A stretch of DNA of 64,000 bases, taken from IMG/VR virus record IMGVR_UViG_3300044997_001199, positions 62,001 to 126,000 of that record. One strand, written 5' to 3'. Positions within the stretch are counted from its first letter, which is position 1; every line of letters begins with the position of its first letter. Position numbers and translations under genes: made by a program. Under the pieces are notes generated by a model. That model was not told the DNA's origin. It searched no databases and saw nothing but the letters and a program-made list of their open reading frames with translations. Positions 23,291 through 47,290 of this stretch are shown here, piece after piece.

Positions 23291-23416
23291 GGTGTTTCCT
23301 ATTTTGTTTGCTAACTGTATTGTAGGCAAACACCAATCATCGGTCAACCAAACATGGTTAGGTCCACAGCGAGCGCTGTATCTGGATCAAGCGGATCATC
23401 ATTTGTTCATTATTAT

Positions 23417-30429: not shown

Positions 30430-32695
30430 TGTCTCTGGGCGGCAACTGAATGACGTTGTAGGACTGAGCATGATTCACTGGGTCGATATCAAAGATCACT
30501 TCGTTGTCCAGCATCCTGGCAGTGACCGAACAGTTTTCTAGCTGATCAAACAGGATGCGACGGCTCAGTGGTACTCGGATCAGTTCGTCGATCTTTCTGC
30601 TCAAGGGCCGTGCTCCCATCTTGTGATCATAGCCCTTTTCGGCCAGATAGTCGATCACTGGCTCGGTCAAGGTCAATCGTATTTGACGACCGGCAAGACT
30701 GGTCTTGAGATCTTCTACGAACTTGACCACAATCTTCTTCACTGCCAGTTGATCCAATTTCCGGAACTTGCAAATCTGGTCGATGCGATTGCGTAGTTCG
30801 GGACGGAAAAATTCTCGTAGCGCACGATCTTCTTCGCCGGTCTTTTCCAGATCCGATGAAAATCCAATGTTGTTGTTTTCGTTGTCACGAGCACCAAGAT
30901 TGGAGGTCATGATGATGATACAGTTTTTGACATCCACTCGCTTGCCATTGTTGGAACTGACATGTCCTTCGTCCAACATCTGCAGCAAGATGTTAGTGAC
31001 ATCCGGGTGTGCTTTTTCGATTTCATCAAACAGCAGCACCGCGAACGGATTTTTATTGAGATCGCTGATGAGTTTGCCACCGCCCACAGTGCCATCTTCG
31101 AAACCAACATAGCCCGGAGGTGCACCGATGAGGCTACTCAAGGTATGACGTTCTTGATATTCGCTCATGTCGTAACGCAGCATCTTCATGTTGAGATTTT
31201 CCGCCAGTAGTTTGGCCAACTCAGTCTTACCTGTGCCCGTGGGTCCAAGAAACAGGAAGCTGGCCATGGGTCTGGTAGTAGGGCCGATGCCCGCAAAGTT
31301 GATATACACTCGTTCCAGCACACGATCCACGACATCGTCCTGTCCGTAGAGTCTCTGCTTGATGTTGCTTTCGAGATCAACGATCTTGGCACTGCGCTCG
31401 TTCTGCAATTTGTCTGTGGGAACTCCGCACACTCTTGTGACCTGTTCCTGGATCATGGCACGAGTGATCGTGACATTGCCCTGATCTTTTACACGTTCTC
31501 GAGCACAGGCACCGTCCAGGAGATCGATGCTCTTGTCGGGATTTTTGCGATCATGCATGTAGCGAGTGGCATATTCCACTGCTGCAGTCATGGCCTCGGT
31601 GTCGATCATGACATTGTGAAACTGTTCCAGGCGCGGACTGAGACCAATGAGTATCTGTTCTGTGGTCGCAGCATCGGGTTCGTCGATGCCCAGACGATAG
31701 AATCTGCGCATGAGTGCGCGATCCTTTTCAAACGACTCGTGATATTCTTCCCAGGTAGTGGATGCAATGACCTTGAGATTGCCGCGGGTGACCGCTGGCT
31801 TCAACATGTTGGCAAAATCAAGATTGCTGTTGGAACCCGAGCCTGCACCGCGCATGGTGTGTGCTTCGTCGATGAACAACACACACTTTTTTTTGTTTTC
31901 CAGTGCTGCTATGACCAATTTGAACTTTTCTTCAAATTCGCCGCGGTATTTGCTGCCGGCCAGCAAGCTGCCAACTTCGAGTCCCCAGACTTCGTGGTCT
32001 TTCAGAAACTCTGGTACTCGACCGGCCATGATTTCCTGTGTAAGGCCTTCCACGATGTGTGTTTTGCCCACACCGGGGTCGCCTACCATGAGCACATTGG
32101 CTTTGAATCTGCGAGCCAAGACCGTGATCATTTCTTGCAGTTCGTGACCGCGACCGATCATGGGCTCGAGACGATTCTCTGCAGCCATTCCTGTGAGATT
32201 GGTGCAGTATTCGTTGAGTATCTCTGTGGCCTGACTGGCAGTCAACTTGGCAGTGTTTGATCCTCGGTCGTAGGTTTTGGTCCAAAAATCCACGAACTCA
32301 TTTTTCTTGACACCATACTTGAGCAAGAAATAGTGAGCATGACTGTTGGTTTCGCTCATGATACTGAGATAAAGATCGGCCGTGGTCAGGTTTCGCCGTC
32401 CGGTAAACATGGCCTGCACATTGGCGCGATTGAAGATGCGTTCCAGTGTCTGAGTTTTTTTGGGCTGGAAATCTTCTGAGTTTTTGACCAGGCCCGCCAG
32501 GCTGTCGATATAGGCTTCGATTTCTATATCCAACAACTCGATTTCCACTCCAAATTTTTCTAGAGTTTTGCGGAACGGTTGATAGCGTATCAGAGCCAAC
32601 AACAGGTGCTCAGTTAACACATATTCATGCTGTTTGTTGCGAGCAATCTTGGTAGCTTCTTCGACGATGGCTTCGATTTCGTGGTTCGGGTTCAT
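30419..32695 (-). CDS. clpA: ClpA-like AAA+ chaperone/protease subunit
   Basis: Clp N-domain, Walker A motifs GDPGVGKT and GPTGTGKT, IGF ClpP-docking loop, no long M-domain. Confidence 0.9.
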   Translation of the reverse strand: MNPNHEIEAIVEEATKIARNKQHEYVLTEHLLLALIRYQPFRKTLEKFGVEIELLDIEIEAYIDSLAGLVKNSEDFQPKKTQTLERIFNRANVQAMFTGRRNLTTADLYLSIMSETNSHAHYFLLKYGVKKNEFVDFWTKTYDRGSNTAKLTASQATEILNEYCTNLTGMAAENRLEPMIGRGHELQEMITVLARRFKANVLMVGDPGVGKTHIVEGLTQEIMAGRVPEFLKDHEVWGLEVGSLLAGSKYRGEFEEKFKLVIAALENKKKCVLFIDEAHTMRGAGSGSNSNLDFANMLKPAVTRGNLKVIASTTWEEYHESFEKDRALMRRFYRLGIDEPDAATTEQILIGLSPRLEQFHNVMIDTEAMTAAVEYATRYMHDRKNPDKSIDLLDGACARERVKDQGNVTITRAMIQEQVTRVCGVPTDKLQNERSAKIVDLESNIKQRLYGQDDVVDRVLERVYINFAGIGPTTRPMASFLFLGPTGTGKTELAKLLAENLNMKMLRYDMSEYQERHTLSSLIGAPPGYVGFEDGTVGGGKLISDLNKNPFAVLLFDEIEKAHPDVTNILLQMLDEGHVSSNNGKRVDVKNCIIIMTSNLGARDNENNNIGFSSDLEKTGEEDRALREFFRPELRNRIDQICKFRKLDQLAVKKIVVKFVEDLKTSLAGRQIRLTLTEPVIDYLAEKGYDHKMGARPLSRKIDELIRVPLSRRILFDQLENCSVTARMLDNEVIFDIDPVNHAQSYNVIQLPPRDNGI

Positions 32696-32714: not shown

Positions 32715-33497
32715 TTATTGATCACGGTGCTGCCGTATGGCTTCGGTGATTTCTGGAGCCACGCGATGCGGTATGTTGACTGACACTTTTACAAATGCAT
32801 CTCCCTGTTGTCCCTGTTGGTTTTTCAGTCCGCAGCCGCGCAATCTCAGCAGGGTCCCGGGCTGACAACCGGCTGGGATCTGCGTGACCAATGAGTTGTT
32901 GTAGATGTCCGACAGTTCCAGGCTTCCGCCCAGTATTAGATCCCAGATCAAAATTTTGCGTTCGGTGACAAGGTTCAACCCTTGTCGTTCCCACCGCGAA
33001 TCTGGGCGTATACGGAACTGTATCATCAGGTCCAGACCATTGGGGCCCAGGCCTGCATACTGTACGTTGGCGCCGTCGTCGATGCCCTGTGGTATAGTGA
33101 TGTCAATGGCCGAAATTTCTTGATTGGTGCTCACAGTCACGGTTCTGTTGCCACCAACCGCAATGTCATAGAGAGATACCCAGAGTGTCATCCTTACATG
33201 ATTGCGTCGCGCCTGTGTTTGTGCAAAGCTCTGATTGCGAAAAACATCAAAAATGTTGTTAAAGTCAAACCTATGAGTTCCGAAATCAAATCTAAAAGTA
33301 TTGGATCCGCCGGAATCATATTCCTGGCGTCGCTGTGCATCTCCCAGTACATTATAGGCACTTTGTATTTCCTGGAACTGCTTGGTGTTGCCGCCGCGAT
33401 CAGGATGATGCTGGCTGGCCAATCGACGATAGGCACGCTTGATTTCTTCGGCGCTGGCAGTGCGAGGTACACTCAACACGCTGTAATGATCTTGCAT
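32715..33497 (-). CDS. DnaJ/CbpA-like co-chaperone
   Basis: J-domain with HPD and DnaJ C-domain; no zinc finger. Confidence 0.9.
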   Translation of the reverse strand: MQDHYSVLSVPRTASAEEIKRAYRRLASQHHPDRGGNTKQFQEIQSAYNVLGDAQRRQEYDSGGSNTFRFDFGTHRFDFNNIFDVFRNQSFAQTQARRNHVRMTLWVSLYDIAVGGNRTVTVSTNQEISAIDITIPQGIDDGANVQYAGLGPNGLDLMIQFRIRPDSRWERQGLNLVTERKILIWDLILGGSLELSDIYNNSLVTQIPAGCQPGTLLRLRGCGLKNQQGQQGDAFVKVSVNIPHRVAPEITEAIRQHRDQ

Positions 33498-34554: not shown

Positions 34555-34897
34555 AGTATTCTTTCATCTTGAGAATCACTGTGCGCTGTTGTGCCATGTG
34601 ATTGCGGATGGTCGCGAAATCCACACTGAGTTGTTCGTATCCGACGTCCGTGATGGCAAACAACACTGCTTCGTTGCCAGACTCTGTGATCTCTTTCCAC
34701 ACCTGCTGTATGTTGTCAGGAGTTACGATGCGCCAACGCACTGGGTGCAGTTGCAGTGCTGCGGGCTCCTCGAGATTCAGTGGCACGCGATCCACGGGTT
34801 TGGTATCGCACTGTATCTGGCGTAAATCACTCCAACTGCATGCACTAAGGCTGATAGTTAGGATTAGCGAGATTAGGACATTCGGGGTTGATTTCAT
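34535..34897 (-). CDS. Outer-membrane spanin (Rz1-like)
   Basis: LSAC lipobox, Pro-containing segment; overlaps the 3' end of the i-spanin. Confidence 0.75.
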   Translation of the reverse strand: MKSTPNVLISLILTISLSACSWSDLRQIQCDTKPVDRVPLNLEEPAALQLHPVRWRIVTPDNIQQVWKEITESGNEAVLFAITDVGYEQLSVDFATIRNHMAQQRTVILKMKEYYEPKTP

Positions 34898-35330
34898 TGG
34901 GTTTCTTTGCATTGATTTCTTTCTCGGTCAACGTAGCACCACTGGCGATCTCCATACAGCGATAGGCATTGTTGGTACCTTGGTTTATTTTTTTTTCTAC
35001 CAGAGAAAGTTTCTCGGTGGCCAAGTCAGACAATGACACTGCGTTGCCGTTGACATCTGTGCGATTTTGTAGACGGTCGCGGAGGTTAGCCACTTCTCGA
35101 TTCTGTTGTCGCACAGCAGCCGACAGTTCGCGACGCAAGCGCTGACCGTTGGTAACATCCTGCTGTATTTGATCAATGACTTGGCGCTGCTGTTCCACTG
35201 TCGTGATCAGTGTGGCATTGTTGGCTTCACTGGTAGCAAGATCGGCCCGGAGACTCTGCACATAGGCATAGATGCCCAGGGCAGCCATGACCACGATCAA
35301 CAACACCACCAGCTTGGCCTGTGCGAACAT
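34845..35330 (-). CDS. Inner-membrane spanin (Rz-like)
   Basis: N-terminal transmembrane helix then coiled coil with C-terminal Cys residues; follows the endolysin. Confidence 0.78.
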   Translation of the reverse strand: MFAQAKLVVLLIVVMAALGIYAYVQSLRADLATSEANNATLITTVEQQRQVIDQIQQDVTNGQRLRRELSAAVRQQNREVANLRDRLQNRTDVNGNAVSLSDLATEKLSLVEKKINQGTNNAYRCMEIASGATLTEKEINAKKPNEINPECPNLANPNYQP

Positions 35331-35798
35331 TTACTTGATGAGACCCGGTTTGTACACAGTTTTGCCGCCTTCTTTGAGTGCAGTCAACACTTGTTTTCTC
35401 TGTGGCCCACTGCGCTTGAGACTGACATGTACCCAGCCCGAATCGGGCACACCGGGAGTGTAAAATTCCAGGATCAACTGGTCAAATTCCATGTTGTCTT
35501 GTATCCATTTGGCCAGATCATAGTTAGGCAAACCGGGACATTCGATGTCGGCTGCTTCACCATTGCAGTGCTGGCTGGTTGCAGCTCCGCCCACGGCCTT
35601 GTTGAGCTCAGGGCCGCGATATCCTGAATTGATGGTCAGTGGACGCTTCATGGCAGTGCGCACCGGCTGCACGATCTTGGTCACTAGATTTTTAAGATTT
35701 TCGAGATGTTCGCCACGTGGGGTATTGTCCAGACCCAGGCGCGCGCCGGTCTGGCTCTTGGTAAATTCGGTAAGTGTGAAGTTTTCGCTGAGCTGCAT
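35331..35798 (-). CDS. Endolysin, peptidase M15A family
   Basis: SGYR...N..VGGA..SQH..GEAAD and WVHVS. Confidence 0.88.
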   Translation of the reverse strand: MQLSENFTLTEFTKSQTGARLGLDNTPRGEHLENLKNLVTKIVQPVRTAMKRPLTINSGYRGPELNKAVGGAATSQHCNGEAADIECPGLPNYDLAKWIQDNMEFDQLILEFYTPGVPDSGWVHVSLKRSGPQRKQVLTALKEGGKTVYKPGLIK

Positions 35799-35816: not shown

Positions 35817-36248
35817 TTATTTATTGAATATGTCTTTTATGAGTTGTTGCGCCCAGTGTTTTGCATTTTGATTGGGTATCACGCGATCGCACCGGACCGG
35901 TGGTTGAAACACGCTGTCGGTATCAGGGAACCTACTGCTGACCAGGGTGTCCATATATACAAGAAAATCTGCGGCAAAAATTTCACGCTGTTTGGGCAAA
36001 GGTGCTACAAAATCTGCCACTACGATGTCAGTAACAGCAAGGTCAGCTGCATCGCGTATGCGCTGTGCCTGCCGCAAACGCCCGGCTTCGGTAAAGTCCC
36101 AATCGTTGAACTGTGCGCGTATTTCATCAGCATTGAGATGCGTCACTGTTTTGCCATGGTCTTTGAGGGCACGAACAAGTTCTCGAGCAAGAAAAGTTTT
36201 GCCTGATCCCGGCAGCCCCATAATGAGAATACGAAATGGTTGCTTCAT
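35817..36248 (-). CDS. Adenylyl-sulfate-kinase-like P-loop kinase (short)
   Basis: GLPGSGKT, LNADEIR, DF...GR..Q and DFVAP. Confidence 0.75.
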   Translation of the reverse strand: MKQPFRILIMGLPGSGKTFLARELVRALKDHGKTVTHLNADEIRAQFNDWDFTEAGRLRQAQRIRDAADLAVTDIVVADFVAPLPKQREIFAADFLVYMDTLVSSRFPDTDSVFQPPVRCDRVIPNQNAKHWAQQLIKDIFNK

Positions 36249-36916
36249 ATCAGATGCTCCCGGCAATTCGCAAGATAGTCGATGAAATCCTGTGTGGACG
36301 CAGTGCGGACTCCGGTGATCTGCAGTGTGCACCGAGGTACATGCCCGGCATTGGCCGTGCAATGCGGAACATTTTGCCAATCAAAGGTAGTGATATCGCC
36401 GCGATACCAACCGCTGTGATTATGGTTACCGTACTGCCAAAAGTGTCCGGGTTTCCAGTCCTCGAGTTGGATCATGATCCTGATCACTCGCTCGGGATTC
36501 TCGGGACACCACTTGCTCAACTTGTCAATGTGTAGATTCCACACCTGACCGGGTCGCTGTATGTGCAGGCGAGTCATGGAATTTTCCAAAACAAACAAAT
36601 CTACCATGCGCTGGAACACTGGTTCGATCTTCCAGTCTAGATCCGTGATTTCACTGTCTCGTGCCATGCCAATAGTGTCGAGATCATGATGTTCTTTTTC
36701 AAGATCCTGGGTTGGTATATCGGCGGTTTGAGACTTGTATCCCCGGGTGGCCCAGGTAGCCGGAGCAGATCTCTGCTTGGCTTGCTCTAGTTCCTGATCC
36801 CAAGATCCCGAGAATCGTCCCAGATACTGCACACAATCCCATCGAGGATCATGCGTTTGAGTATCAAAATGATATTTGCTGGAACTGCGAGTTTCTTGCC
36901 AACTGCTGTTGCTCAT
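36245..36916 (-). CDS. 2OG-Fe(II) dioxygenase (Asp/Asn-hydroxylase-like)
   Basis: PG....LHID (HxD)...PH.TAN.G..PR..LQITG. Confidence 0.75.
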   Translation of the reverse strand: MSNSSWQETRSSSKYHFDTQTHDPRWDCVQYLGRFSGSWDQELEQAKQRSAPATWATRGYKSQTADIPTQDLEKEHHDLDTIGMARDSEITDLDWKIEPVFQRMVDLFVLENSMTRLHIQRPGQVWNLHIDKLSKWCPENPERVIRIMIQLEDWKPGHFWQYGNHNHSGWYRGDITTFDWQNVPHCTANAGHVPRCTLQITGVRTASTQDFIDYLANCREHLI

Positions 36917-37536
36917 AGCACGTAGACCTCGACATCGGACTTTTTGTAGTCTTGTTGATATTCAGCAGGCGGTGATGCAATGCCCAGTTCCGCACACAGT
37001 CGATGATTGTTGTTTACTGACCGAGCACTGTGATTTTTTAATGCCTGGGCCAGATCGGCATTTTGTTGATCGATTATGTGTCCCATGTTCCTGAGATTTT
37101 TATAGTATTTGTCATATCGAGGATAGGTGATATCAAATTCTCCGCAGCGCACCCACCATCCCAGGCAAGCGTCGTTGGGACGCGTCACAGCGACAATGGG
37201 CGAATGGGGCCAGGTCTTTTTGAGAAAATCGATGTGATGTGCAAACACGTGACTTTTTACGATTCTCACGCCCCGCTGATTCGAAAATGGGCGGTCAAAT
37301 TCTTTCTCACACTGGTCAGCACGGTGCTGGTCTAGATTCAAAAACCAATCTCCAAATTCCATGCCTGGATCATAATATGCACCGAGATGCATGAGTTCGC
37401 GATAACCGGTGGCATCGTGATAGTATGTGCGTTCATCGGAGTAGTCGCTGCGGTCGACATCGGGCGAATAGTAAATGTTTTTTATGACCGAGCTCCACTT
37501 GGAACCCGGAGCTCCAGCCACAAAAATGTATTTCAT
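36913..37536 (-). CDS. Sulfotransferase-like P-loop protein
   Basis: FVAGAPGSKWS, IVKSH and V.R motifs. Confidence 0.6.
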   Translation of the reverse strand: MKYIFVAGAPGSKWSSVIKNIYYSPDVDRSDYSDERTYYHDATGYRELMHLGAYYDPGMEFGDWFLNLDQHRADQCEKEFDRPFSNQRGVRIVKSHVFAHHIDFLKKTWPHSPIVAVTRPNDACLGWWVRCGEFDITYPRYDKYYKNLRNMGHIIDQQNADLAQALKNHSARSVNNNHRLCAELGIASPPAEYQQDYKKSDVEVYVL

Positions 37537-38183
37537 GACGTGGTCTTTCGTTGATCTCGCGGACGTATGCCGTTCCATACCTGCTGATCCAACCAATACT
37601 GATCAACATGAGTAACATACTTGGAATTGGGATCCTGATCTAAGAACTTAAAGATATCAGGATGATCTACGCCAATCGGGAAATCCAATATCCTGGCAAG
37701 GTATCGTAGATAGTTGTGTCGATGTGCAAACAGGGATTCGGTGCTGATAAAATGCACAGGAAATTCACTGGACAACAGGTATTGATAGTAATCCAGCGCA
37801 ATGGGAGTGGTACACTCCTTGCGAACACGCAGTTGCTGTTCGCGATTGATCGTGGCGTCGCGGCAGATAATGGCAATGGTAGTTTCCACTCCAAGCCTCA
37901 ATGAGTGCCGGGCCATTTCCAAGATTTTTGGAATATGACGAACACCATCATAATAAAACGGGCAACTCACATTGGCCAGCCAATAGTCCGGGCCGTTAAA
38001 ATGCTCCAATGAAAGCTGTTCGGGATGTATCCAGTAGTCTGCAAATGGTTCTTCGTCGCTGGGTATCCAATAGTGATCCAGTAGACTTTTCCAGCCACCT
38101 ACCTGTTCGGCAGTGCTGAAAATCCTGCTGAACAAGTGGTTACCGCTGCCCTGTGGCCCGGTCACGATCAATAATTTTTTCAT
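37533..38183 (-). CDS. Sulfotransferase-like P-loop protein
   Basis: TGPQGSGNHLFS, I.RD and S.E; paralog of the next gene. Confidence 0.6.
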   Translation of the reverse strand: MKKLLIVTGPQGSGNHLFSRIFSTAEQVGGWKSLLDHYWIPSDEEPFADYWIHPEQLSLEHFNGPDYWLANVSCPFYYDGVRHIPKILEMARHSLRLGVETTIAIICRDATINREQQLRVRKECTTPIALDYYQYLLSSEFPVHFISTESLFAHRHNYLRYLARILDFPIGVDHPDIFKFLDQDPNSKYVTHVDQYWLDQQVWNGIRPRDQRKTTS

Positions 38184-38824
38184 GGTTTTTCTTTGAAAAC
38201 TAGGCCCAGTTGATTGCCTTGATCCAGCACACAGGGTCCCACTTCGTGTATATACTTAGCGTTGGCATCGTCTTGCAAAATCTTCTCTAATCGATCATCC
38301 GCCCAGGCCACTGGAATGTTCACGGCCAGCTGCTTGAGATAGCGGTGTCGATAGAGATACAACAGTTCGTAACTCAAAAACACGATGTCGCTGAACGAGT
38401 CAAGTTGGTCCAACAAAAGGTCCACAGTGGAACGAGTGCGTATCCTTGTCTGCTGATAGCGCAAAATGTTTTGATCACGGCCTATCACTGCGATTGCTGT
38501 GGAGACGCCCTGACACTGTACCGCAGCAACAAAATCTTTCACATCAGGCACCCACAATGGATTTAGATCACTGCCGGGTATGCCCAGCGGGACACTGATA
38601 CTGGTAAAATAATAATCGCTCTGAGACCAGTCAAATGAGTCTAGGCCAGCAGTGTCTCTCCAGCACGATGCAAACGGTTCGGCAAATCTGTGGGCTTCCC
38701 AGTAGTTTTCCAACAGTGTTTTCCAACCAAAAACCTCTGGGTGCAGGCTGAATACCTTGCTCCACAAATGATTGCCAGCTCCTTGCGGACCAGTCAATAT
38801 CAACATCTGTTTGGTGATGTTCAT
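38180..38824 (-). CDS. Sulfotransferase-like P-loop protein
   Basis: TGPQGAGNHLWS, GRD.NI, SYE and DANAKY. Confidence 0.6.
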   Translation of the reverse strand: MNITKQMLILTGPQGAGNHLWSKVFSLHPEVFGWKTLLENYWEAHRFAEPFASCWRDTAGLDSFDWSQSDYYFTSISVPLGIPGSDLNPLWVPDVKDFVAAVQCQGVSTAIAVIGRDQNILRYQQTRIRTRSTVDLLLDQLDSFSDIVFLSYELLYLYRHRYLKQLAVNIPVAWADDRLEKILQDDANAKYIHEVGPCVLDQGNQLGLVFKEKP

Positions 38825-39369
38825 ATTTTAATTAGTTGCTGTATTTCCGAAGGTAAAAAAGGATCTTGCATTCTTTCAGGATGCCACACGATTCCGGCCA
38901 TGGCACCGTCGATCCAGGCCTCGCAGTGTCCCTGTGGATCCCGGGCCAGACAATGTGCCGACGAGTGCAGAGTCACAATGGCTTGATTGTGGTAGCTGTT
39001 GACTTTTATATCAAGCCCTAGATAGTTGATTGAGTGTTCACAGTCCAGGTGCCCGTCGCAAGACTCGACCTGTCCGCCCAGCACATCGGTCAACATAAAC
39101 GCTCCGTGGCATATTCCCAGTATGGGCTTGCATTGTTGCATCATCAGCGAGGCAACACGAAACTCCACAGAGCGGCGGATTGCACTGTCATCGCCGCCAG
39201 TGATAATCAAGGCATCGACACTATCGGTCAACGCTTCAAAATCTTGTTCGAGTGTGTTGGGTATAAAAACGAACCTATGACCCTTGAGGAACTTGTACCA
39301 GACCTGTTCCAGAGAATCATAGGCTCGTCCGCGATGATAGAGAACCCGTTGAGTGATCCCTATCTTCAA
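38821..39369 (-). CDS. Class I glutamine amidotransferase / peptidase C26
   Basis: ITGG, GICHG, NSYH and WHPE triad; probable TTG start at 39369. Confidence 0.85.
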   Translation of the reverse strand: MKIGITQRVLYHRGRAYDSLEQVWYKFLKGHRFVFIPNTLEQDFEALTDSVDALIITGGDDSAIRRSVEFRVASLMMQQCKPILGICHGAFMLTDVLGGQVESCDGHLDCEHSINYLGLDIKVNSYHNQAIVTLHSSAHCLARDPQGHCEAWIDGAMAGIVWHPERMQDPFLPSEIQQLIKI

Positions 39370-39370
39370 T

Positions 39371-40069
39371 TCACCAGCCGTATGCGTTGGCGACCAAATC
39401 ACGGCCTGCAGTAGCAGCAGTGGTATTGCGGCAAGAAATCTCATAGAGATCACGACGCATTGCAGCTACCAGTTGCGAAATACGATCTTGCACTGCCGGA
39501 TCGTTGGTCAGTTCGGCCAGACGACGCGCACCGATTTTGGCATGGAAGCCTTCGTCACGGGCGATCTTGGCATAGTGACTAGCGATGAACTGATCTTCGA
39601 TGCAGCGAGCCATTTCGTCCCATACTGCTTCGGCACGACCTTCGGCTACCAGTTGATACGCAGCCAGAGCGGCTTCGTCATTTTGTGCATCGTACTTTTC
39701 CAGCAGCGAAGCACCCTTGGCAGTGGGGTTGGCAGTTTCAGCAGCGATTGCGGCTTCAACATCAACCGGTGCGCCAGTGATGTGTTCGATCACTTCCTTG
39801 ACCATGCGGAAGTGACGAGCTTCGTCCTGTGCTTGCTTGGTCAGAAGTTCCAGTTCAACTGGATCGGTATCAGCAGGCAATTCGGCGATGGCACGGCTGA
39901 TTTCTACCATGTTCATGCGCTCGTTGACCATACGACCAATGAAGTGTTCGACCAATTCTTCTTGAGCAGGCTGGCTCTCAAAGTATGCACGAACATTGTG
40001 TTGACTGGCTTGAAAAAGTGCTTGATTGTCTTGAACAATCTTTTCCACAAACTGTTTTCCTGTAAGCAT
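39371..40069 (-). CDS. Ferritin-like diiron protein
   Basis: E...DEARH...E...DEGFH, i.e. two ExxH motifs; GGAG RBS. Confidence 0.8.
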   Translation of the reverse strand: MLTGKQFVEKIVQDNQALFQASQHNVRAYFESQPAQEELVEHFIGRMVNERMNMVEISRAIAELPADTDPVELELLTKQAQDEARHFRMVKEVIEHITGAPVDVEAAIAAETANPTAKGASLLEKYDAQNDEAALAAYQLVAEGRAEAVWDEMARCIEDQFIASHYAKIARDEGFHAKIGARRLAELTNDPAVQDRISQLVAAMRRDLYEISCRNTTAATAGRDLVANAYGW

Positions 40070-40162
40070 TACAATCTCCTTGATATATAATTATGAAAAA
40101 CAGCAAATATCAAAAAATTTTGATTCTTTGCTAGATTTATTTATCAAACTGGAAAAAATATC

Positions 40163-40900
40163 GTGAATACAAAAATTTTTAAGTTGATATCTGAACAATT
40201 AAATCAGAGCTTTGGATTGGCAAGATATCAGGGATTGGTTGATCGCATCAATGAACACACCGTGATTGATGATTTGCCCTGGACTCCGGCAAGATACAGA
40301 AAATTCAAACAATGCATCGAAACAGAACTAGACTTGACCTCCACATTCTCAGGTTCGATCAAAGACACTGTGGATGATTTTGATCAGCGATATTCTGCCA
40401 GGTTCTTTGGCCAGATGTGGAAACCGAGAACCGACGAGTATTTTTACACGGGTTGGAATCTAGTTGAGGAAATCAATCGGCAGGATCCCCAATCAGTGTT
40501 AGATGTTGGTTGCGGTTATCATCCGTTCAAGGGACGTATACGAAATCTAATTGGTATTGATCCCTATAACAATTGTGCAGATTACATGATAGATATATTG
40601 GATTATCGGGTCCCCGACGGAACACACGATCATATCATTGCACTGGGGTCGATCAATTTCAACTCAAAACAAGACATAGAATTGAGATTCGCCCAGTGTG
40701 TTAGATTGTTATCTCCCGGCGGCCGGCTATACATGCGTTGCAATCCGGGCATTGCCTGGTCTGCAGGACCGTATGTTGACATTTTTCCTTGGAGTTTTGA
40801 AACTGCGTACGAACTGTCCACGAAATATCAGCTGACTCTGTCGGCTATCAAGAAAGACTATGATCGACTAGCAATATTTTTTAGCAAATCTTTTACTTGA
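40163..40900 (+). CDS. Class I methyltransferase with N-terminal ACP-like helical domain
   Basis: VLDVGCG, GIDP, ALGSINF and L.PGG. Confidence 0.78.
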   Translation: MNTKIFKLISEQLNQSFGLARYQGLVDRINEHTVIDDLPWTPARYRKFKQCIETELDLTSTFSGSIKDTVDDFDQRYSARFFGQMWKPRTDEYFYTGWNLVEEINRQDPQSVLDVGCGYHPFKGRIRNLIGIDPYNNCADYMIDILDYRVPDGTHDHIIALGSINFNSKQDIELRFAQCVRLLSPGGRLYMRCNPGIAWSAGPYVDIFPWSFETAYELSTKYQLTLSAIKKDYDRLAIFFSKSFT

Positions 40901-41499
40901 TTGATCCAATGATCGGCTGCAGCATGATGTGCTGTATCCATTGGATGATTACGTTCGGTAATCAAAAACTGTTTTTTCTTGCTCCATTCCAAAAAGTTAT
41001 CCCCATCGAAGTTACGCAAGTGTGGGGAAATTTTTGATTGCAAATATCTAATAGCGTGACTATTGTCGCTGGGGCGTTGCTCAAACAACAAATGATCCAT
41101 ATATGTCATTAGGAATGGAATTTTTTGATCCTGTAAATACTCGATTGCAGTGCTCACCCAGATCAAAGAATTGAGTTTATCCTGCCAGTCGGATTGTAAA
41201 TGTTTGTAATAAATTTCATTGAGTGGTATCGTTTCCCCGGGACGAATGGTTTTCCAGCGATGATTGCCGGGGTTTAAATCAACCCGATCGGCAAATGTCC
41301 AATTGACTATTACGATAGTATCGCTGTTTCTGGCATGATGCAGCACTCGGTGACAGATTCTTAAATTTCCCACGCCTCCGCGGGCATGATTGTCATGCCC
41401 GAGACCCAGGCGTTGAGCAATGATTGCCGGCCAAGTCTGTGTGGGATCACTTAGTTCGTCGCCGGCAAGAAAACTACAGCCGAAACTTTGTATTTTCAT
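40858..41499 (-). CDS. SGNH-hydrolase-like protein
   Basis: FGCSF..G, GVGN, WT..DR and HP...AH. Confidence 0.7.
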   Translation of the reverse strand: MKIQSFGCSFLAGDELSDPTQTWPAIIAQRLGLGHDNHARGGVGNLRICHRVLHHARNSDTIVIVNWTFADRVDLNPGNHRWKTIRPGETIPLNEIYYKHLQSDWQDKLNSLIWVSTAIEYLQDQKIPFLMTYMDHLLFEQRPSDNSHAIRYLQSKISPHLRNFDGDNFLEWSKKKQFLITERNHPMDTAHHAAADHWINQVKDLLKNIASRS

Positions 41500-42162: not shown

Positions 42163-42744
42163 TCATGATGTTTCTCCTTTGTAAAAATCAATACCTGCTG
42201 CATCCTGCAGGTCGCGTATGTCTGGCTTCACACAATGGATACGCTTTGTGGGGAGACCAGCTGCCTCGCGCCACTCGTTGAGATCGGTTTCTCGTTCTCG
42301 ACGATAAGCGTCCGGAGTCAGTGGTACGATTTCCGAAAATACCTGTTCGCTCCAGGGCATGTAACGGCCATCGTAGTGCATGACCCAGTCTTTGAGTTCA
42401 AACTCGGTCAGGGTAGATAGATCATCCAGCAGTTCGTTGATCAGTCGCGGTGCAGCACTGCGGCGCCGCAGTTCCACATACACGAGATAACGATTGGGTT
42501 TGAGTTCGCCTGGACTGCAATCTGCATCCACTACAAAATCATAGCCCTTTTCAAACCATGACATCAAGTCTCGGGCAGCCCGTTTGCTGCGAACAAAAAA
42601 GCTGATCACAATGATATCCTCGTCGTCGCCCATCTTGGAACTGAATTCGTCCACGTGGATGGAGGGCTTTATCATGCCTTCGAGGTCGCGGAATTCCAGA
42701 CCTTCAGAAAGCCGGCGCGATCGATTGTAGTTGCTGTTGTGCAT
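42163..42744 (-). CDS. Conserved-type hypothetical (possibly head morphogenesis) protein
   Basis: LSEGL...DEF.SKMG.D; tandem with the upstream gene. Confidence 0.6.
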   Translation of the reverse strand: MHNSNYNRSRRLSEGLEFRDLEGMIKPSIHVDEFSSKMGDDEDIIVISFFVRSKRAARDLMSWFEKGYDFVVDADCSPGELKPNRYLVYVELRRRSAAPRLINELLDDLSTLTEFELKDWVMHYDGRYMPWSEQVFSEIVPLTPDAYRRERETDLNEWREAAGLPTKRIHCVKPDIRDLQDAAGIDFYKGETS

Positions 42745-42745
42745 T

Positions 42746-43279
42746 TTATGCTTGCTTGTCTCTCTGATATTCTTCTTGATCCAGATCCATTTCATAGGCC
42801 CGGTCTAGATCTTCGAGATCGATTTCTTCATCTTCCATTTCCACAGAACCAGTGCGGATGTCACTCATCAGGGCCTTGGGTATGATGATCTCTACCAGCC
42901 ATACCGGACGTTCCACTAGCCTGGCCTTCTTGGTTCCGGGGATGAAATCGTTGGGGTTAGTGATACGTATGGGTATCGTGATCTTGGTTTTTCTGTACAA
43001 GACCCGTATGTCAAATGGCAGCAGACGCCGTGCGCCGCGCGGATCAGGCATGAGATGTTCGGGCCAGAGAAATGTACAGGCCACGCGATATCTACCAATG
43101 TCTGGACCTTCTACTAACTCGCCTATGTCCCAGTTGCGGAATGCATAGAGGTCCAGTTCGTCTAACACACGTTCGAAATCCAGCAGGGTAGTGAGACTGC
43201 CATTGGACATATAGATGTCACGGATGTTGTCGGCTACCTGCCAATAGTTTTTGTGATTTTTAAATGTGTCGCGATCCAT
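42746..43279 (-). CDS. Conserved-type hypothetical protein
   Basis: DFERVLD..DLYAF.NW..GELV.GP...MPDP; TAAATA at 43285-43290. Confidence 0.65.
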   Translation of the reverse strand: MDRDTFKNHKNYWQVADNIRDIYMSNGSLTTLLDFERVLDELDLYAFRNWDIGELVEGPDIGRYRVACTFLWPEHLMPDPRGARRLLPFDIRVLYRKTKITIPIRITNPNDFIPGTKKARLVERPVWLVEIIIPKALMSDIRTGSVEMEDEEIDLEDLDRAYEMDLDQEEYQRDKQA

Positions 43280-43437
43280 GACAGTATTTATGGGTTGCGA
43301 CAATTCCTGGGGTTTTTGGTCTAAAACCTGCCGAGCGAAATATTTAGTCGAGATCTTGACTGAAAACTGTGCCTATTAAATTCGTGGCAGTGTCTCTTTA
43401 AATACCTGCGTTGTACCATCCCAAAAGGAGAATAGTC

Positions 43438-44175
43438 TTGAGCCGCAATCGAGCAGCAAAAACACAAAAACGCATGAATACCTCAGTTCTAGAAAACACT
43501 ATCAATTTCAACCAAGCACCCCGCAATCAAACACGGAAAATCGATCTGGTGCCACGCTCGCGCAGCCAAGAACGATTGGTGTTGGCCCTACAGGACGCAC
43601 AGGTTCCGATCGTGGTCGCAGTGGGACCAGCTGGAACAGGTAAAACCTATCTGGCCATGCAGGCCGCAGTCAAGGCCCTGCGAGAGGGCGAATGTGAACG
43701 TATTGTCATAACCAGACCTGCCGTGGGCGTGGAGGACGAGCGTCATGGATTTTTGCCCGGAAATCTCACAGCCAAGATGGAGCCCTGGACTCGGCCGTTG
43801 CTGGATGTAGCACGCGAGTACTATCGTACTCAGGACCTGGTAAGCATGATAGAAAATCAGATTATCGAAATCGCACCTCTGGCATTCATGAGAGGTCGCA
43901 CGTTCAAGGATTCCTGGATCATAGCAGACGAAATGCAAAATGCCACCCCGGGGCAGGTAAAAATGTTGATGACACGCATTGGCTCTCACAGTCGCGTAGT
44001 CATAACCGGAGATGTCGAGCAGGCCGATCGTCAGGGCAAAGACAATGGATTGTTGGATCTGTGTCAGAAATTGCAGGCCAATCCGGTGTCAGGGATCGCA
44101 GTGTGCGAACTTGGTGCACGTGATGTGCAACGCCATCCTATCATCGGATCGATATTGCAACTCTACAATGTCTAG
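43438..44175 (+). CDS. phoH: PhoH-family ATPase
   Basis: GPAGTGKT, GFLPG, MRGRTF, DEMQN and GD..Q.D; AGGAG RBS before TTG at 43438. Confidence 0.92.
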   Translation: MSRNRAAKTQKRMNTSVLENTINFNQAPRNQTRKIDLVPRSRSQERLVLALQDAQVPIVVAVGPAGTGKTYLAMQAAVKALREGECERIVITRPAVGVEDERHGFLPGNLTAKMEPWTRPLLDVAREYYRTQDLVSMIENQIIEIAPLAFMRGRTFKDSWIIADEMQNATPGQVKMLMTRIGSHSRVVITGDVEQADRQGKDNGLLDLCQKLQANPVSGIAVCELGARDVQRHPIIGSILQLYNV

Positions 44176-44786
44176 CCTGTGATGGTTTGATAAATGTCCT
44201 GCCAGTCACGAGCTCGGACGATCAGGGCATGATTGTAACTGACATTATGATCATGCTCTAGCAGTATTGATTTCAGCCCGATCCTGGTGCCTGCCAGGGC
44301 ATTTTCCGGTTTGTCCTCCACCCACCATAGACCACTGTCTCGGTAAGGTTTCAGTGCCTCATCCTTGTTGCTACCGGTTTCCAGGCACAGTATGCTATCA
44401 AAAACATCACCAAAGTGATTTTGGAGATTCTGTTTTCTCAACTGCACTGCATAGGGATCCTCACTGAGGCTGGTAATCACAGTGAATCGATAGCCGTGTT
44501 GTTGGTTGAGCCGTTTGACCCATGGCACTGCATCGCGAAACGGGGTTAGAAAACCAATGGCAGCTGATTCGTTGAACAATTTGGTATATTTTTTTGCCTG
44601 TGATTCCGGAATATCAAATTGGTCATGTATACAATAGTATCCCTGTGCGCCTGGCTGCTGCTGTAGTCCGCGAGCCGCCATCCACTGCTGGAAGGTTTCC
44701 GTCCAATCCAGCAACACTCCGTCGCAGTCAACCAGGATTGTTTTGTGATTCACCAATGATCTCGATTTGATAGCCATTGATTTCAA
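44172..44786 (-). CDS. HAD-family nucleotidase-like protein (start probably GTG at 44753)
   Basis: DCDGVL, ITS and VEDK motifs. Confidence 0.8.
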   Translation of the reverse strand: MKSMAIKSRSLVNHKTILVDCDGVLLDWTETFQQWMAARGLQQQPGAQGYYCIHDQFDIPESQAKKYTKLFNESAAIGFLTPFRDAVPWVKRLNQQHGYRFTVITSLSEDPYAVQLRKQNLQNHFGDVFDSILCLETGSNKDEALKPYRDSGLWWVEDKPENALAGTRIGLKSILLEHDHNVSYNHALIVRARDWQDIYQTITG

Positions 44787-46768: not shown

Positions 46769-47290
46769 TTAACGTAAAAATTCCGCTGGATCTAAATCGT
46801 AGTAGAGACTGTTAACTCGATGAACACCCAGTTTGTACAGCACGAAACTGGCCACGCACGATCCTCTACCAACTCCCCAGACAATGTTGTTATCTCTCAT
46901 GACATCAACCAGATACTTGAGATATCGTAACAAATCAAACATGTCACGTTCTTGGAACATCAATAATTCTTGGCCGACTCTCTGCAGTTCCGCATCGTCG
47001 CAGCAGGATCGCAGCACGTGCTTGGCGATGTCTAGGTCGCGATACTCCGGGGGCATGAACCAATGATTTTGTTGTCGACTGTCATATTCGTCAATAGAAA
47101 TCTCCGCATCGGTGGGCACGTGCCAGGTCGATAGGTTTCCTGGCTCGCCCAACAGACCCGACAATGCCTCCAAATCCACAGTGTGATCGACCACCAGGCC
47201 CAGCAGAGACGATATGCCACGGCCCTGCATGACCAGATCAATTATGTCATGGTCAGAATATACATATTCACCCACATGATTAATTTTCAT
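46769..47290 (-). CDS. Stand-alone DNA polymerase III alpha (DnaE)-like fragment
   Basis: R...E......G.GRGS..AS.V.Y.LG.H......Y.L....FL; ends before the catalytic PDID motif. Confidence 0.75.
   Translation of the reverse strand: MKINHVGEYVYSDHDIIDLVMQGRGISSLLGLVVDHTVDLEALSGLLGEPGNLSTWHVPTDAEISIDEYDSRQQNHWFMPPEYRDLDIAKHVLRSCCDDAELQRVGQELLMFQERDMFDLLRYLKYLVDVMRDNNIVWGVGRGSCVASFVLYKLGVHRVNSLYYDLDPAEFLR

What the first reader, a model, noticed from the sequence alone, without database searches (positions are those of the whole stretch)
35817..41499. Unexplained biosynthetic-type operon: diiron enzyme, amidotransferase, three sulfotransferase-like proteins, 2OG dioxygenase, APS-kinase-like protein, MTase
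Seen: seven minus-strand genes abutting or overlapping by 4 nt (ferritin-like, C26, P-loop x3, dioxygenase, kinase), a divergent MTase across an AT-rich spacer, and an SGNH gene. Established: APS kinase makes PAPS, the sulfotransferase donor; diiron and 2OG enzymes oxidise or hydroxylate. Inference: a coherent oxidise, amidate, sulfate/phosphorylate and methylate pathway for a small molecule, lipid, glycan or protein residue. I cannot match it to a described pathway.
Basis: partly seen in the sequence, partly recalled or inferred. Interest (0 to 1): 0.7.

Follow-up and report, generated by a model that had tools for sequence, protein, structure and literature searches.

The report
Lake jumbo-phage sulfotransferase–oxygenase operon
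A giant lake-water phage carries a tightly packed, widely conserved set of enzyme genes (three sulfotransferase-like proteins, two iron oxygenases, an amidohydrolase, a PAPS-type kinase and a methyltransferase) that looks like a pathway for oxidising and sulfating an unknown, probably imported, small molecule, and no described pathway matches it.

Summary
Seven minus-strand genes (K, D, S1, S2, S3, G, F; 35817-40069) form one translationally coupled operon. Five junctions are ATGA overlaps. A methyltransferase diverges across a 93-nt, 78% AT spacer, and an SGNH-like gene follows it.

Fold and motif evidence supports these assignments:
- K: short APS-kinase family member.
- D: 2OG/Fe(II) oxygenase.
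- S1: canonical Sulfotransfer_3.
- S2/S3: sulfotransferase fold with an atypical donor loop.
- G: class I amidotransferase/C26, catalytic triad intact.
- F: diiron protein.

The set is co-conserved in uncultured large-phage contigs. Among 48 distinct loci holding F, M occurs in 96%, S1 in 90%, G in 85%, S2/S3 in 73%, D in 62% and K in 33%. K never occurs without a sulfotransferase-like gene. Half of the loci add tripartite tricarboxylate transporter (TTT) parts.

F, S2 and S3 had no match in 50,697 GenBank phage records. A reduced version (F, M, S1, S2, cupin) sits beside a sulfonate-type ABC importer in two Oxalobacteraceae chromosomes.

Best reading, confidence about 0.4: a PAPS-type hydroxylate-then-sulfate tailoring pathway acting on an imported anionic metabolite. 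Substrate and product are unknown.

The parts
35817..36248 (-). K: short (143 aa) APS-kinase-family P-loop kinase
   Evidence: Pfam APS_kinase 46 bits, above the cut-off of 21.1. NCBIfam adenylyl-sulfate kinase models score 1e-10 but lie far below their cut-offs. It aligns to solved APS kinases only over residues 8-91. phrog_10255 'kinase'. Its ATG overlaps the D stop. In 16 related loci the same kinase is fused to an NMNAT-like HxGH/ISxT nucleotidyltransferase domain that is absent here.
36245..36916 (-). D: 2-oxoglutarate/Fe(II) oxygenase, Asp/Asn-beta-hydroxylase or prolyl-hydroxylase-like
   Evidence: H129-x-D131...H185 and R195 are invariant in 23 homologs. The AF2 model has pLDDT 92. VIA-align gives Z 11-12 to proline 3-hydroxylase, PHD2 and PiuC. 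Atlas neighbours are Asp_Arg_Hydrox proteins, including bacterial fusions with Sulfotransfer_3. A distant hit in a cyanophage is annotated as 2OG-Fe(II) oxygenase.
36913..37536 (-). S1: Sulfotransfer_3-family sulfotransferase with canonical motifs
   Evidence: 13 of 25 family members hit Pfam Sulfotransfer_3, best E 1e-6. The window copy scores E 0.005. Atlas features and structure neighbours are Sulfotransfer_3 clusters. PGS[K/R]WS, K94-S-H96 and R119 are invariant or nearly so. It is almost always directly upstream of D.
37533..38183 (-). S2: divergent sulfotransferase-fold protein, the conserved paralog type
   Evidence: Same family as S3, 36% identical. The S2 type is the one kept in bacteria and in most phage loci. 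No Pfam, PHROG or NCBIfam hit.
38180..38824 (-). S3: divergent sulfotransferase-fold protein; in other loci a cupin gene sits immediately upstream of a single S2-type gene
   Evidence: The AF2 model has pLDDT 93. The top 22 VIA-align hits are all sulfotransferases (CurM ST, OLS ST, TPST1/2, Teg12, 3-OST, NDST) at Z 8.5-10.8, above P-loop kinases at Z 8.3 or less. AFDB and Atlas neighbours are sulfotransferases. The donor loop is an invariant G-P-Q-G-S/A-G-N-H, with Gln where sulfotransferases have Lys/Arg.
38821..39369 (-). G: class I glutamine amidotransferase / peptidase C26 type Cys-His-Glu amidohydrolase (182 aa, TTG start)
   Evidence: Pfam Peptidase_C26 9e-13 and GATase 8e-8. The best NCBIfam hit is gamma-glutamyl-CDP-amidate hydrolase, E 4e-19, 69.6 bits, against a cut-off of 250. 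C87 and H163-P-E165 are invariant. Start position corrected.
39371..40069 (-). F: ferritin-like/HDO-like diiron protein, the most conserved gene of the set
   Evidence: E50, E83xxH86, E143/E147 and E173xxH176 are invariant; identity to homologs is 60-80%. More than 2,651 metagenome homologs. Atlas structure neighbours are TenA/Haem_oxygenase_2 (TM 0.75), PaaC, AurF and Ald_deCOase. No match in GenBank phages.
40070..40162 (.). AT-rich divergent intergenic spacer between F and M, the presumed promoter region
   Evidence: 93 nt, 78.5% AT. No sigma-70 consensus above chance and no T4 late-promoter motif.
40163..40900 (+). M: class I SAM-dependent methyltransferase (Methyltransf_11/25 type), divergent from F
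   Evidence: Weak Pfam hits to Methyltransf_25/11, with a VLDVGCG motif. Atlas neighbours are Methyltransf_11/UbiE-type clusters. Present next to F in 96% of loci.
40858..41499 (-). H: SGNH-type hydrolase-like protein, an accessory member
   Evidence: G7-C-S9, G42/G44-N45 and [D/E]188-x-x-H191 are conserved. Profile-profile probability of 99% to family f22, which has a weak Lipase_GDSL_2 hit. Present in 25% of loci.

Best explanation
This is a phage-borne, translationally coupled operon for a PAPS-type 'hydroxylate, then sulfate' tailoring pathway. It most likely acts on a small anionic metabolite that the infected cell imports. The proposed steps are as follows. K, an APS-kinase-type enzyme, phosphorylates the 3'-OH of host-made APS (or a close analogue) to supply the 3'-phospho-nucleotide donor. 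Two iron oxygenases, F (diiron) and D (2OG/Fe), oxidise or hydroxylate the substrate. S1, a canonical sulfotransferase always paired with D, sulfates the new hydroxyl. S2 and S3 are sulfotransferase-fold paralogs with an unusual Gln-containing donor loop, and S2 is linked with F in the bacterial copies; they transfer the same or a related group to other positions. G, a Cys-His-Glu amidohydrolase, removes a gamma-glutamyl group or draws nitrogen from glutamine. M methylates, and H (SGNH) removes an ester. What is shown: the gene order and coupling, the folds and catalytic motifs, the co-conservation, and the link with transporters. What is inferred: the donor, the order of steps, the nature of the substrate, and the benefit to the phage.
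For: Operon structure: five ATGA overlaps. Co-conservation in 48 distinct loci holding F: M 96%, S1 90%, G 85%, S2/S3 73%, D 62%, K 33%; K never occurs without a sulfotransferase-like gene, and D lacks S1 in only 1 locus. S1 is a Sulfotransfer_3 member carrying the PSB-loop K/R, the K-x-H motif and the 3'-phosphate Arg. S3's best structural matches are exclusively sulfotransferases. K is above Pfam's APS_kinase cut-off. In 16 loci K is fused to an HxGH nucleotidyltransferase, the two-domain logic of PAPS and CoA synthases, which make 3'-phospho-ADP-X. D is a 2OG oxygenase with an intact triad. Bacterial proteins fuse Sulfotransfer_3 with Asp_Arg_Hydrox, a Rosetta-stone link for S1 and D. A small-molecule substrate is supported by TctC-type periplasmic binding proteins and TctA inside the operon in 25 of 48 loci, and by an SsuA/TauA-type ABC importer flanking the bacterial copies in Massilia and Janthinobacterium.
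Against: No substrate or product is known, and no scaffold-building enzyme is present. S2/S3 have Gln where sulfotransferases need Lys/Arg, and they lack the K-x-H motif, so they may not transfer sulfate at all. K aligns to APS kinases only over its first 91 residues and is about 45 aa shorter than solved ones. K is absent from two thirds of loci. No ATP sulfurylase or PAPS reductase lies in the 215-kb record. The nucleotidyltransferase fused to K elsewhere resembles NMN adenylyltransferases (E 9e-6), not ATP sulfurylase. The proteins are minimal (about 210 aa), which may suit macromolecular substrates. The operon runs straight into the lysis genes. The F-G complex prediction gave no answer. 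No RNA run was listed.
Confidence: 0.4

Rival explanations
1. The enzymes decorate a macromolecule: a virion or host protein residue (beta-hydroxylation plus O-sulfation, in the manner of AspH and TPST), or an envelope glycan or lipid. The modification is made late in infection.
For: D's nearest families are protein hydroxylases (AspH, prolyl hydroxylases). S3's top matches include protein-tyrosine and heparan sulfotransferases. Bacterial structural neighbours of both are TPR fusions, which are typical of protein binding. The roughly 210-aa enzymes lack substrate lids. Transferase-like paralogs expand in some loci, for example f24 x5 in L016. The operon abuts the endolysin/spanin genes. Collagen-like tail-fibre genes lie in the window.
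Against: Periplasmic solute-binding proteins and TctA inside the operon, and the ABC importer beside the bacterial copies, point to a small solute. There are no glycosyltransferases, no precursor-peptide gene and no TPR domains here.
Confidence: 0.2
2. This is an organosulfur-scavenging module. An imported sulfonate or sulfate ester is oxidised by F/D, and its sulfur is fed into host assimilation. The sulfotransferase-fold proteins may run in reverse (sulfate ester + PAP gives PAPS), with K boosting PAPS.
For: The bacterial copies sit next to an SsuA/TauA-family importer and a sulfatase-family protein. Freshwater phage 'cysC' genes are common, enriched in large genomes and transcribed (PMC10914622). 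The source is lake water.
Against: No cysH, sulfite reductase or Cys synthase is in the record. The phage loci carry TTT rather than sulfonate importers. A methyltransferase and a gamma-glutamyl hydrolase have no obvious role. The family is essentially virus-specific: F was not found in 300 other genomes of the Massilia genome's family, and S2/S3 was not found in 400 other genomes of its phylum.
Confidence: 0.12
3. The donor is not PAPS but another 3'-phospho-nucleotide-X, and the transferred group is not sulfate. An example would be a phosphoramidate-like group, as in the O-methyl phosphoramidate pathway of Campylobacter jejuni, followed by methylation by M.
For: G's best curated family is gamma-glutamyl-CDP-amidate hydrolase (Cj1417), at 69.6 bits against 36.7 for the next family. 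The APS-kinase-like K parallels Cj1415 (my own knowledge of that pathway). A nucleotidyltransferase is fused to K in 16 loci. A methyltransferase is nearly always present. The invariant Gln in the S2/S3 donor loop suggests a different transferred group. The pathway steps are described in PMC6429109 and in bioRxiv 10.1101/2024.11.05.622173.
Against: No glutamine kinase (PF01326) or NTP_transf_3 cytidylyltransferase is in the record. G scores far below the family cut-off of 250. S1 has fully canonical sulfotransferase motifs. The known MeOPN transferases are not sulfotransferase-fold, to my knowledge. G and K are both absent from the bacterial copies.
Confidence: 0.1
4. The enzymes hypermodify phage DNA or RNA, through hydroxylation, activation as an ester and then substitution.
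For: The family is virus-specific. The operon lies in a replication and nucleotide-metabolism neighbourhood: PhoH, NT5C-like nucleotidase and clamp loader. K has weaker similarity to tRNA kinases (PSTK, KTI12).
Against: No ThyA-type hydroxymethylase was found, and ThyX is present. D is not TET/JBP-like. No DNA-binding or transglycosylase genes are present. The in-operon transporters are hard to reconcile with this reading.
Confidence: 0.05

Closest known systems
Sulfation tailoring sets with a dedicated PAPS supply: cylindrospermopsin CyrI/CyrJ/CyrN, saxitoxin SxtN/SxtO, rhizobial NodH with NodPQ (recalled from my own knowledge, not tested here)
   Same: A sulfotransferase sits with its own APS kinase, and in the cyr cluster a prolyl-hydroxylase-like 2OG hydroxylase is also present, all in one gene cluster. 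The hydroxylate and sulfate logic is the same.
   Different: Here there is no scaffold synthase. There are three sulfotransferase-fold proteins, two of them with a non-canonical donor loop. A diiron protein and a C26 hydrolase are added. The set is carried by phages and is almost confined to them.
Viral cysC/cysH 'assimilatory sulfate reduction' auxiliary genes (PMC10914622; bioRxiv 10.1101/2021.01.05.425418)
   Same: K is the kind of gene that such surveys call cysC. It comes from a lake and from a large phage genome.
   Different: K here is a 143-aa truncated kinase. It is never found without sulfotransferase-like genes in the loci examined. No cysH is in the record. This points to PAPS use rather than sulfate reduction.
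O-methyl phosphoramidate donor pathway of Campylobacter jejuni (Cj1415-Cj1418 and methyltransferases)
   Same: It combines a C26-type gamma-glutamyl hydrolase (G's best curated family hit), an APS-kinase-like 3'-kinase, a nucleotidyltransferase (fused to K in relatives) and a methyltransferase.
   Different: The glutamine kinase is absent. The nucleotidyltransferase is NMNAT-like. The transferases are sulfotransferase-fold. F and D have no counterpart.
Bacterial multidomain proteins joining Sulfotransfer_3, DUF4915 and Asp_Arg_Hydrox, and TPR-sulfotransferases (ESM Atlas clusters, function unknown)
   Same: They pair the same two folds as S1 and D, here as neighbouring genes.
   Different: The relationship is structural only (TM about 0.6). 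There are no TPR or DUF4915 domains here, and those proteins are themselves uncharacterised.
Chromosomal island in Massilia atriviolacea SOD and Janthinobacterium sp. UMAB-56
   Same: It holds F (66% identity), S2 (51-52%), S1 (36-40%), M (35-37%) and the f18 cupin in the same sub-arrangements.
   Different: It lacks G, D, K, S3 and H. It adds a sulfatase/NPP-like protein, a 2H phosphoesterase and an SsuA/TauA-type ABC importer. It is undescribed.

Membership tests
PAPS-dependent sulfotransferases | Sulfotransferase alpha/beta fold | tested here: met
   S3 model: the top 22 VIA-align matches are all sulfotransferases, Z 8.5-10.8. S1: the structure of its cluster representative matches Sulfotransfer_3 clusters at TM 0.62-0.66.
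PAPS-dependent sulfotransferases | Sequence-family membership (Pfam Sulfotransfer_1/3) | tested here: inconclusive
   S1 family: 13 of 25 members hit Sulfotransfer_3, best E 1e-6, but the window copy scores E 0.005, below the cut-off. S2/S3: no Pfam hit.
PAPS-dependent sulfotransferases | 5'-phosphosulfate-binding loop with catalytic Lys/Arg | tested here: inconclusive
   S1 has an invariant PGS[K/R]WS, so the feature is met. S2/S3 have an invariant GPQG(S/A)GNH with Gln at that place, so it is not met. The motif definition is from my own knowledge.
PAPS-dependent sulfotransferases | Binding of PAPS and transfer of sulfate | not testable with these tools
   PAPS and PAP are not among the ligands offered for complex prediction. 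An enzyme assay is needed.
Adenylyl-sulfate (APS) kinase, CysC | Pfam APS_kinase above the gathering score, with a Walker A motif | tested here: met
   46 bits against a cut-off of 21.1; GLPGSGKT is present.
Adenylyl-sulfate (APS) kinase, CysC | Full-length domain, including the C-terminal half with the lid | tested here: not met
   Only profile positions 2-91 of 152 match. Alignment to solved APS kinases stops at residue 91 of 143. The NCBIfam equivalog models score about 40 bits against cut-offs of 127-244.
2-oxoglutarate/Fe(II) oxygenases | Double-stranded beta-helix fold with an HxD...H triad and a basic residue for 2OG | tested here: met
   H129, D131, H185 and R195 are invariant. Z 11-12 to proline hydroxylases and PHD2.
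Class I glutamine amidotransferase / peptidase C26 | Cys-His-Glu triad in a GATase fold | tested here: met
   Peptidase_C26 and GATase score above their cut-offs. C87, H163 and E165 are invariant.
Class I glutamine amidotransferase / peptidase C26 | A partner synthase domain that accepts the ammonia | tested here: inconclusive
   No synthase is fused or recognisable in the cluster. The F-G complex prediction gave no answer.
Ferritin-like diiron carboxylate proteins | Four-helix bundle with E...ExxH twice | tested here: met
   E50, E83xxH86, E143/E147 and E173xxH176 are invariant. Atlas structure neighbours are diiron and HDO families. The Pfam hits are all below their cut-offs.
C. jejuni O-methyl phosphoramidate pathway | L-glutamine kinase (PPDK_N-type) and CTP:phosphoglutamine cytidylyltransferase | tested here: not met
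   PF01326 and PF12804 were not found in the 215-kb record, which CheckV estimates as 61% complete.
C. jejuni O-methyl phosphoramidate pathway | Gamma-glutamyl-CDP-amidate hydrolase equivalog | tested here: not met
   It is the best hit, but at 69.6 bits against a cut-off of 250.
SGNH/GDSL hydrolases | Conserved blocks with Ser, Gly, Asn and DxxH | tested here: inconclusive
   The blocks are present in the H alignment. H has no Pfam hit. Its relative f22 hits Lipase_GDSL_2 only at E 0.005.

The most novel reading that the evidence does not exclude
Uncultured jumbo phages make their own 3'-phospho-nucleotide donor, using a kinase that in many relatives is fused to an NMNAT-like nucleotidyltransferase. 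A virus-specific clade of sulfotransferase-fold enzymes with a Gln donor loop then transfers a group that is not simple sulfate, or transfers sulfate onto an unprecedented target such as an imported metabolite turned into a phage-specific effector. This would be a new branch of group-transfer chemistry in viruses.
Probability: 0.15. Interest if true: 0.9.

Novelty: new variant of a known kind. Interest (0 to 1): 0.66.

Why it matters
Sulfotransferase genes are annotated in many phage genomes, yet their role 'remains unclear' (PMC10580990). Phage cysC is currently read as a sulfate-assimilation gene (PMC10914622). This operon gives both a concrete context: a conserved, largely virus-specific enzyme set in which the kinase always accompanies sulfotransferase-like genes.

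If the pathway makes a sulfated metabolite or mark, it would be a new kind of phage metabolic reprogramming in lakes, and it would be a source of unusual minimal sulfotransferases and a new diiron enzyme family.

The two culturable Oxalobacteraceae strains that carry a reduced copy make the question testable without culturing the phages.

Tried and rejected
- **Profile searches against PDB sequences.** F, D, S2/S3 and S1 gave nothing significant.
- **tblastn against 50,697 GenBank phage records.** F, S2 and S3 gave no match. S1 matched only two unannotated marine single-cell virus records. D matched one distant cyanophage 2OG oxygenase.
- **DNA hypermodification.** No ThyA-type enzyme was found and ThyX is present. 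This reading was ranked low.
- **Sulfate activation or reduction genes.** No PAPS reductase or ATP sulfurylase was found elsewhere in the record.
- **Full MeOPN pathway.** The glutamine kinase and the cytidylyltransferase are absent.
- **Periplasmic G.** Rejected, because the signal-peptide-like extension is an out-of-frame read of the end of F.
- **ATP-sulfurylase identity for the domain fused to K in relatives.** Rejected in favour of NMNAT-like (against the weak hit).
- **F-G complex prediction.** No answer.
- **Promoter scans.** Sigma-70 and T4 late-promoter scans showed nothing above chance.
- **RNA runs.** None was listed.
- **Literature searches for the gene combination.** No description was found.
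- **SAO/DVU_155x NCBIfam names.** These are generic family resemblance, not a lead.

Full report
**Where the window lies**

The window is bases 62001-126000 of a 215-kb IMG/VR virus record that CheckV estimates as 61% complete. The record has a T4-type DNA polymerase whose nearest cultured relatives are the 350-490-kb Rak2/Atu_ph07-type jumbo phages (Sinorhizobium phage Phosso 49%, Atu_ph07 44%). The same DNA is held by at least four lake-water metagenome runs. The sequence is therefore part of an uncultured freshwater jumbo phage.

**Check of the observation**

The seven minus-strand genes and their tight packing are real. After correcting three over-extended ORFs, the operon reads F 40069-39371, G 39369-38821, S3 38824-38180, S2 38183-37533, S1 37536-36913, D 36916-36245 and K 36248-35817.
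- Five junctions are ATGA overlaps. The F stop is followed after 1 nt by the TTG start of G.
- G is 182 aa. The 210-aa reading, with an apparent signal peptide, is the out-of-frame continuation into the end of F. Homologs start at the same MKIGLTQR position, and several have stops upstream.
- M (40163-40900) diverges from F across a 93-nt spacer of 78.5% AT.
- H (41499-40858) converges on M.
- An M15 endolysin (35798-35331) follows K after 18 nt, and after it comes a membrane/coiled-coil protein that may be a spanin.

**What each protein is**

- **K.** It passes Pfam's APS_kinase cut-off (46 against 21.1 bits). Only its first 91 residues align with solved APS kinases, and at 143 aa it is about 45 residues short of them.
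- **D.** It has no family hit. An invariant H-x-D...H...R is present. A confident model (pLDDT 92) matches 2OG proline hydroxylases, PHD2 and PiuC at Z 11-12. Its Atlas neighbours are Asp/Asn beta-hydroxylase-family proteins.
- **S1.** It belongs to Sulfotransfer_3: 13 of 25 family members hit, best E 1e-6. It keeps PGS[K/R]WS, K-S-H and an Arg that, from my knowledge of sulfotransferases, correspond to the donor loop, the catalytic Lys/His and the 3'-phosphate site.
- **S2 and S3.** They are 36% identical paralogs. The S3 model (pLDDT 93) has sulfotransferases as its 22 best structural matches (CurM and OLS sulfotransferase domains, TPST1/2, Teg12, 3-OST, NDST; Z 8.5-10.8), above P-loop kinases. 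AFDB and Atlas searches agree. Their donor loop is an invariant GPQG(S/A)GNH, with Gln where Lys/Arg is expected, so their chemistry may differ.
- **G.** It is a class I amidotransferase/C26 protein with an invariant Cys-His-Glu. Its best curated family is gamma-glutamyl-CDP-amidate hydrolase, well below the cut-off.
- **F.** It has the two ExxH pairs of a diiron site and is the most conserved gene, at 60-80% identity. Its nearest non-viral structural clusters are TenA/Haem_oxygenase_2 (TM 0.75), PaaC, AurF and aldehyde-deformylating-oxygenase-like.
- **M.** It is a class I SAM methyltransferase of the Methyltransf_11/UbiE type.
- **H.** It carries SGNH blocks.

**Conservation**

F has about 340 tblastn-confirmed stretches in IMG/VR and more than 2,651 metagenome proteins. 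None lies in 50,697 GenBank phage records.

In 48 loci with distinct F sequences and at least 5 kb on both sides, the following lie within 6 kb of F:
- M 96%
- S1 90%
- G 85%
- S2/S3 73%
- D 62%
- K 33%
- H 25%

K never occurs without a sulfotransferase-like gene. D lacks S1 in only one locus.

The order M< F> G> ... S1> D> S2> K> recurs with local permutations.

The pan-cluster holds further genes:
- TctC-type periplasmic binding proteins (families f9 and f41) and TctA (f40), which sit inside the operon in 25 of 48 loci.
- A Cupin_2 protein (f18) that sits immediately upstream of a single S2-type gene, where loci like this one have two S2/S3 copies.
- DUF2061 and DUF6552 membrane proteins.
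- Further SGNH proteins (f22).
- Extra paralog families (f24, f27, f31).

In 16 loci K is fused to a C-terminal domain with GRWQPWHxGH and ISxTxIR motifs. This domain matches NMN adenylyltransferases (E 9e-6), with weak CTP_transf_like and ATP-sulfurylase hits. A P-loop kinase of the 3'-OH-phosphorylating (APS kinase) family joined to an HxGH nucleotidyltransferase is the logic of the PAPS and CoA synthases, which make 3'-phospho-ADP-X. That comparison is from my own knowledge. The window's phage has the kinase-only form, as do ten other loci.

**Bacterial copies**

A scan of 185,579 species genomes found F in only four records. Two are isolates: the Massilia atriviolacea SOD chromosome and Janthinobacterium sp. 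UMAB-56.
- In both, F, the f18 cupin and S2 lie on one strand, and M and S1 lie on the other.
- Between them sit a sulfatase-family/NPP-like protein and a 2H phosphoesterase.
- An SsuA/TauA-family ABC importer (binding protein, permease, ATPase) flanks the block.
- No phage structural genes are nearby.
- F was not found in 300 other genomes of the same family, and S2/S3 was not found in 400 other genomes of the phylum.

The set is therefore essentially viral, with rare capture by bacteria. The core shared by phages and bacteria is F, M, S1 and S2.

**Most likely mechanism**

Three observations carry the argument. (i) The operon combines two oxygenases with three sulfotransferase-fold proteins and a kinase of the family that makes their donor. 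(ii) S1 is bound to D in gene order, and the same two folds are fused in bacterial proteins. (iii) Solute-uptake genes of two unrelated types travel with the set in phages and in bacteria.

I therefore read it as a PAPS-type hydroxylate-then-sulfate tailoring pathway for an imported anionic small molecule. G handles a gamma-glutamyl or glutamine-derived nitrogen, M methylates, and H removes an ester.

This reading also reinterprets the 'cysC' genes reported in large freshwater phages (PMC10914622) as donor supply for viral sulfotransferases rather than for sulfate assimilation. No cysH or ATP sulfurylase lies in this record.

Confidence is about 0.4, because the donor, substrate and product are all inferred.

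**Rivals**

- **Macromolecule decoration (0.2).** It fits the protein-hydroxylase and TPST likeness, the minimal size of the enzymes and the position next to the lysis genes. It does not explain the transporters.
- **Organosulfur scavenging (0.12).** It fits the sulfonate-type importer and the sulfatase in bacteria. It leaves M and G without a role, and it lacks the reduction genes.
- **A non-sulfate donor such as a phosphoramidate (0.1).** It is suggested by G's best family (Cj1417), by the kinase plus nucleotidyltransferase architecture and by the Gln donor loop of S2/S3. The pathway is described in PMC6429109 and in bioRxiv 10.1101/2024.11.05.622173. However, the glutamine kinase and the cytidylyltransferase are absent, and S1 is a canonical sulfotransferase.
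- **Nucleic-acid modification (0.05).** It lacks the usual partner genes.

**Comparison with what is known**

The closest described systems are sulfation tailoring sets with their own APS kinase (cyr, sxt and nod clusters; recalled from my own knowledge), the viral cysC/cysH auxiliary genes, and the MeOPN donor pathway. None matches in gene content. I found no paper describing this combination. One paper states that the role of phage sulfotransferases is unclear.

I rate the finding as a new variant of a known kind. The enzyme families are recognisable. The assembly, its virus-specific spread and the atypical S2/S3 clade are new.

**Limits**

- Only D and S3 were modelled.
- The record is incomplete.
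- Host assignment is only hinted at. A permuted tmRNA, which is outside the window, has the tag ANDDVYAEDLRLAA. The polymerase is nearest to phages of Alphaproteobacteria, whereas the bacterial copies are in Betaproteobacteria.
- No expression data could be obtained.

Noticed in passing
window 30419-32695 and 32715-33497: The phage encodes a 758-aa ATP-dependent protease/chaperone-like AAA+ protein (phrog_4871, E 4e-232) directly next to a full DnaJ (J domain plus C-terminal domain). This is a chaperone pair in a jumbo phage.
   Followed up: no
window 27655-28800: A 381-aa protein has an N-terminal cytidylyltransferase-like (HxGH) domain (E 3.5e-5). It might be an NMN adenylyltransferase-type NAD salvage enzyme. 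It shows weak similarity to the domain fused to K in related phages, and it has no solved-structure match.
   Followed up: partly
G000:C1:45066-48492 and 198608-202584 (outside the window): The record carries 14 tRNA genes in two arrays and a permuted (two-piece) tmRNA with the tag ANDDVYAEDLRLAA. This may be a clue to the host.
   Followed up: no
window 34845-35798: An M15 endolysin (35331-35798) and a 161-aa protein with an N-terminal membrane helix and a coiled coil (34845-35330, spanin-like) follow K in the same direction. In many related loci a different lysis cassette (f15, f12, f20) takes this place.
   Followed up: partly
window 22751-23347 and 44172-44786; 43411-44175: Two NT5C-like 5'(3')-deoxynucleotidase genes and a PhoH gene are present. 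PhoH and the proteins at 42163-42795 and 42746-43303 (no family hit) are syntenic with the cluster in about half of the loci.
   Followed up: partly
window 46769-47524: A 251-aa ORF matches only a 74-residue piece of the bacterial DNA polymerase III alpha NTPase domain. It may be a fragment or a split gene.
   Followed up: no
window 49658-53983, 56685-58055 and 60478-61749: A 1,441-aa protein has a head-closure-like segment. Tail-fibre genes give many short repeat-type matches to tail-fibre families, which may indicate collagen-like repeats.
   Followed up: no
L016:3500-10600, L004 and L003: Some related loci hold up to five copies of an uncharacterised 282-aa family (f24) and a 315-aa family (f27), interleaved with the sulfotransferase-like genes. 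This is a local paralog expansion of unknown meaning.
   Followed up: partly
L069:144-1292, L075:1636-2631, L061:993-3044 and L006:1970-3055: Related phage contigs carry radical SAM/SPASM proteins near PhoH. One subgroup also carries a CHASE2-adenylate/guanylate cyclase and a FecR-like protein just upstream of M.
   Followed up: no
L104:7775-9433: In Massilia only, the island contains a secreted fusion of a glutaminyl cyclase beta-propeller with the C-terminal domain of a CpdB-type 2',3'-cyclic-nucleotide phosphodiesterase/3'-nucleotidase. This is an unusual architecture.
   Followed up: partly
L102 (MAG labelled Nitrosopumilaceae) and L105 (Rhodobacteraceae bin): Two short contigs in metagenome-assembled 'genomes' carry the phage-type arrangement: DUF6552, cupin, S2, F and G in L102, and F, G, cupin and S2 in L105. 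They are probably viral contigs that were mis-binned.
   Followed up: partly
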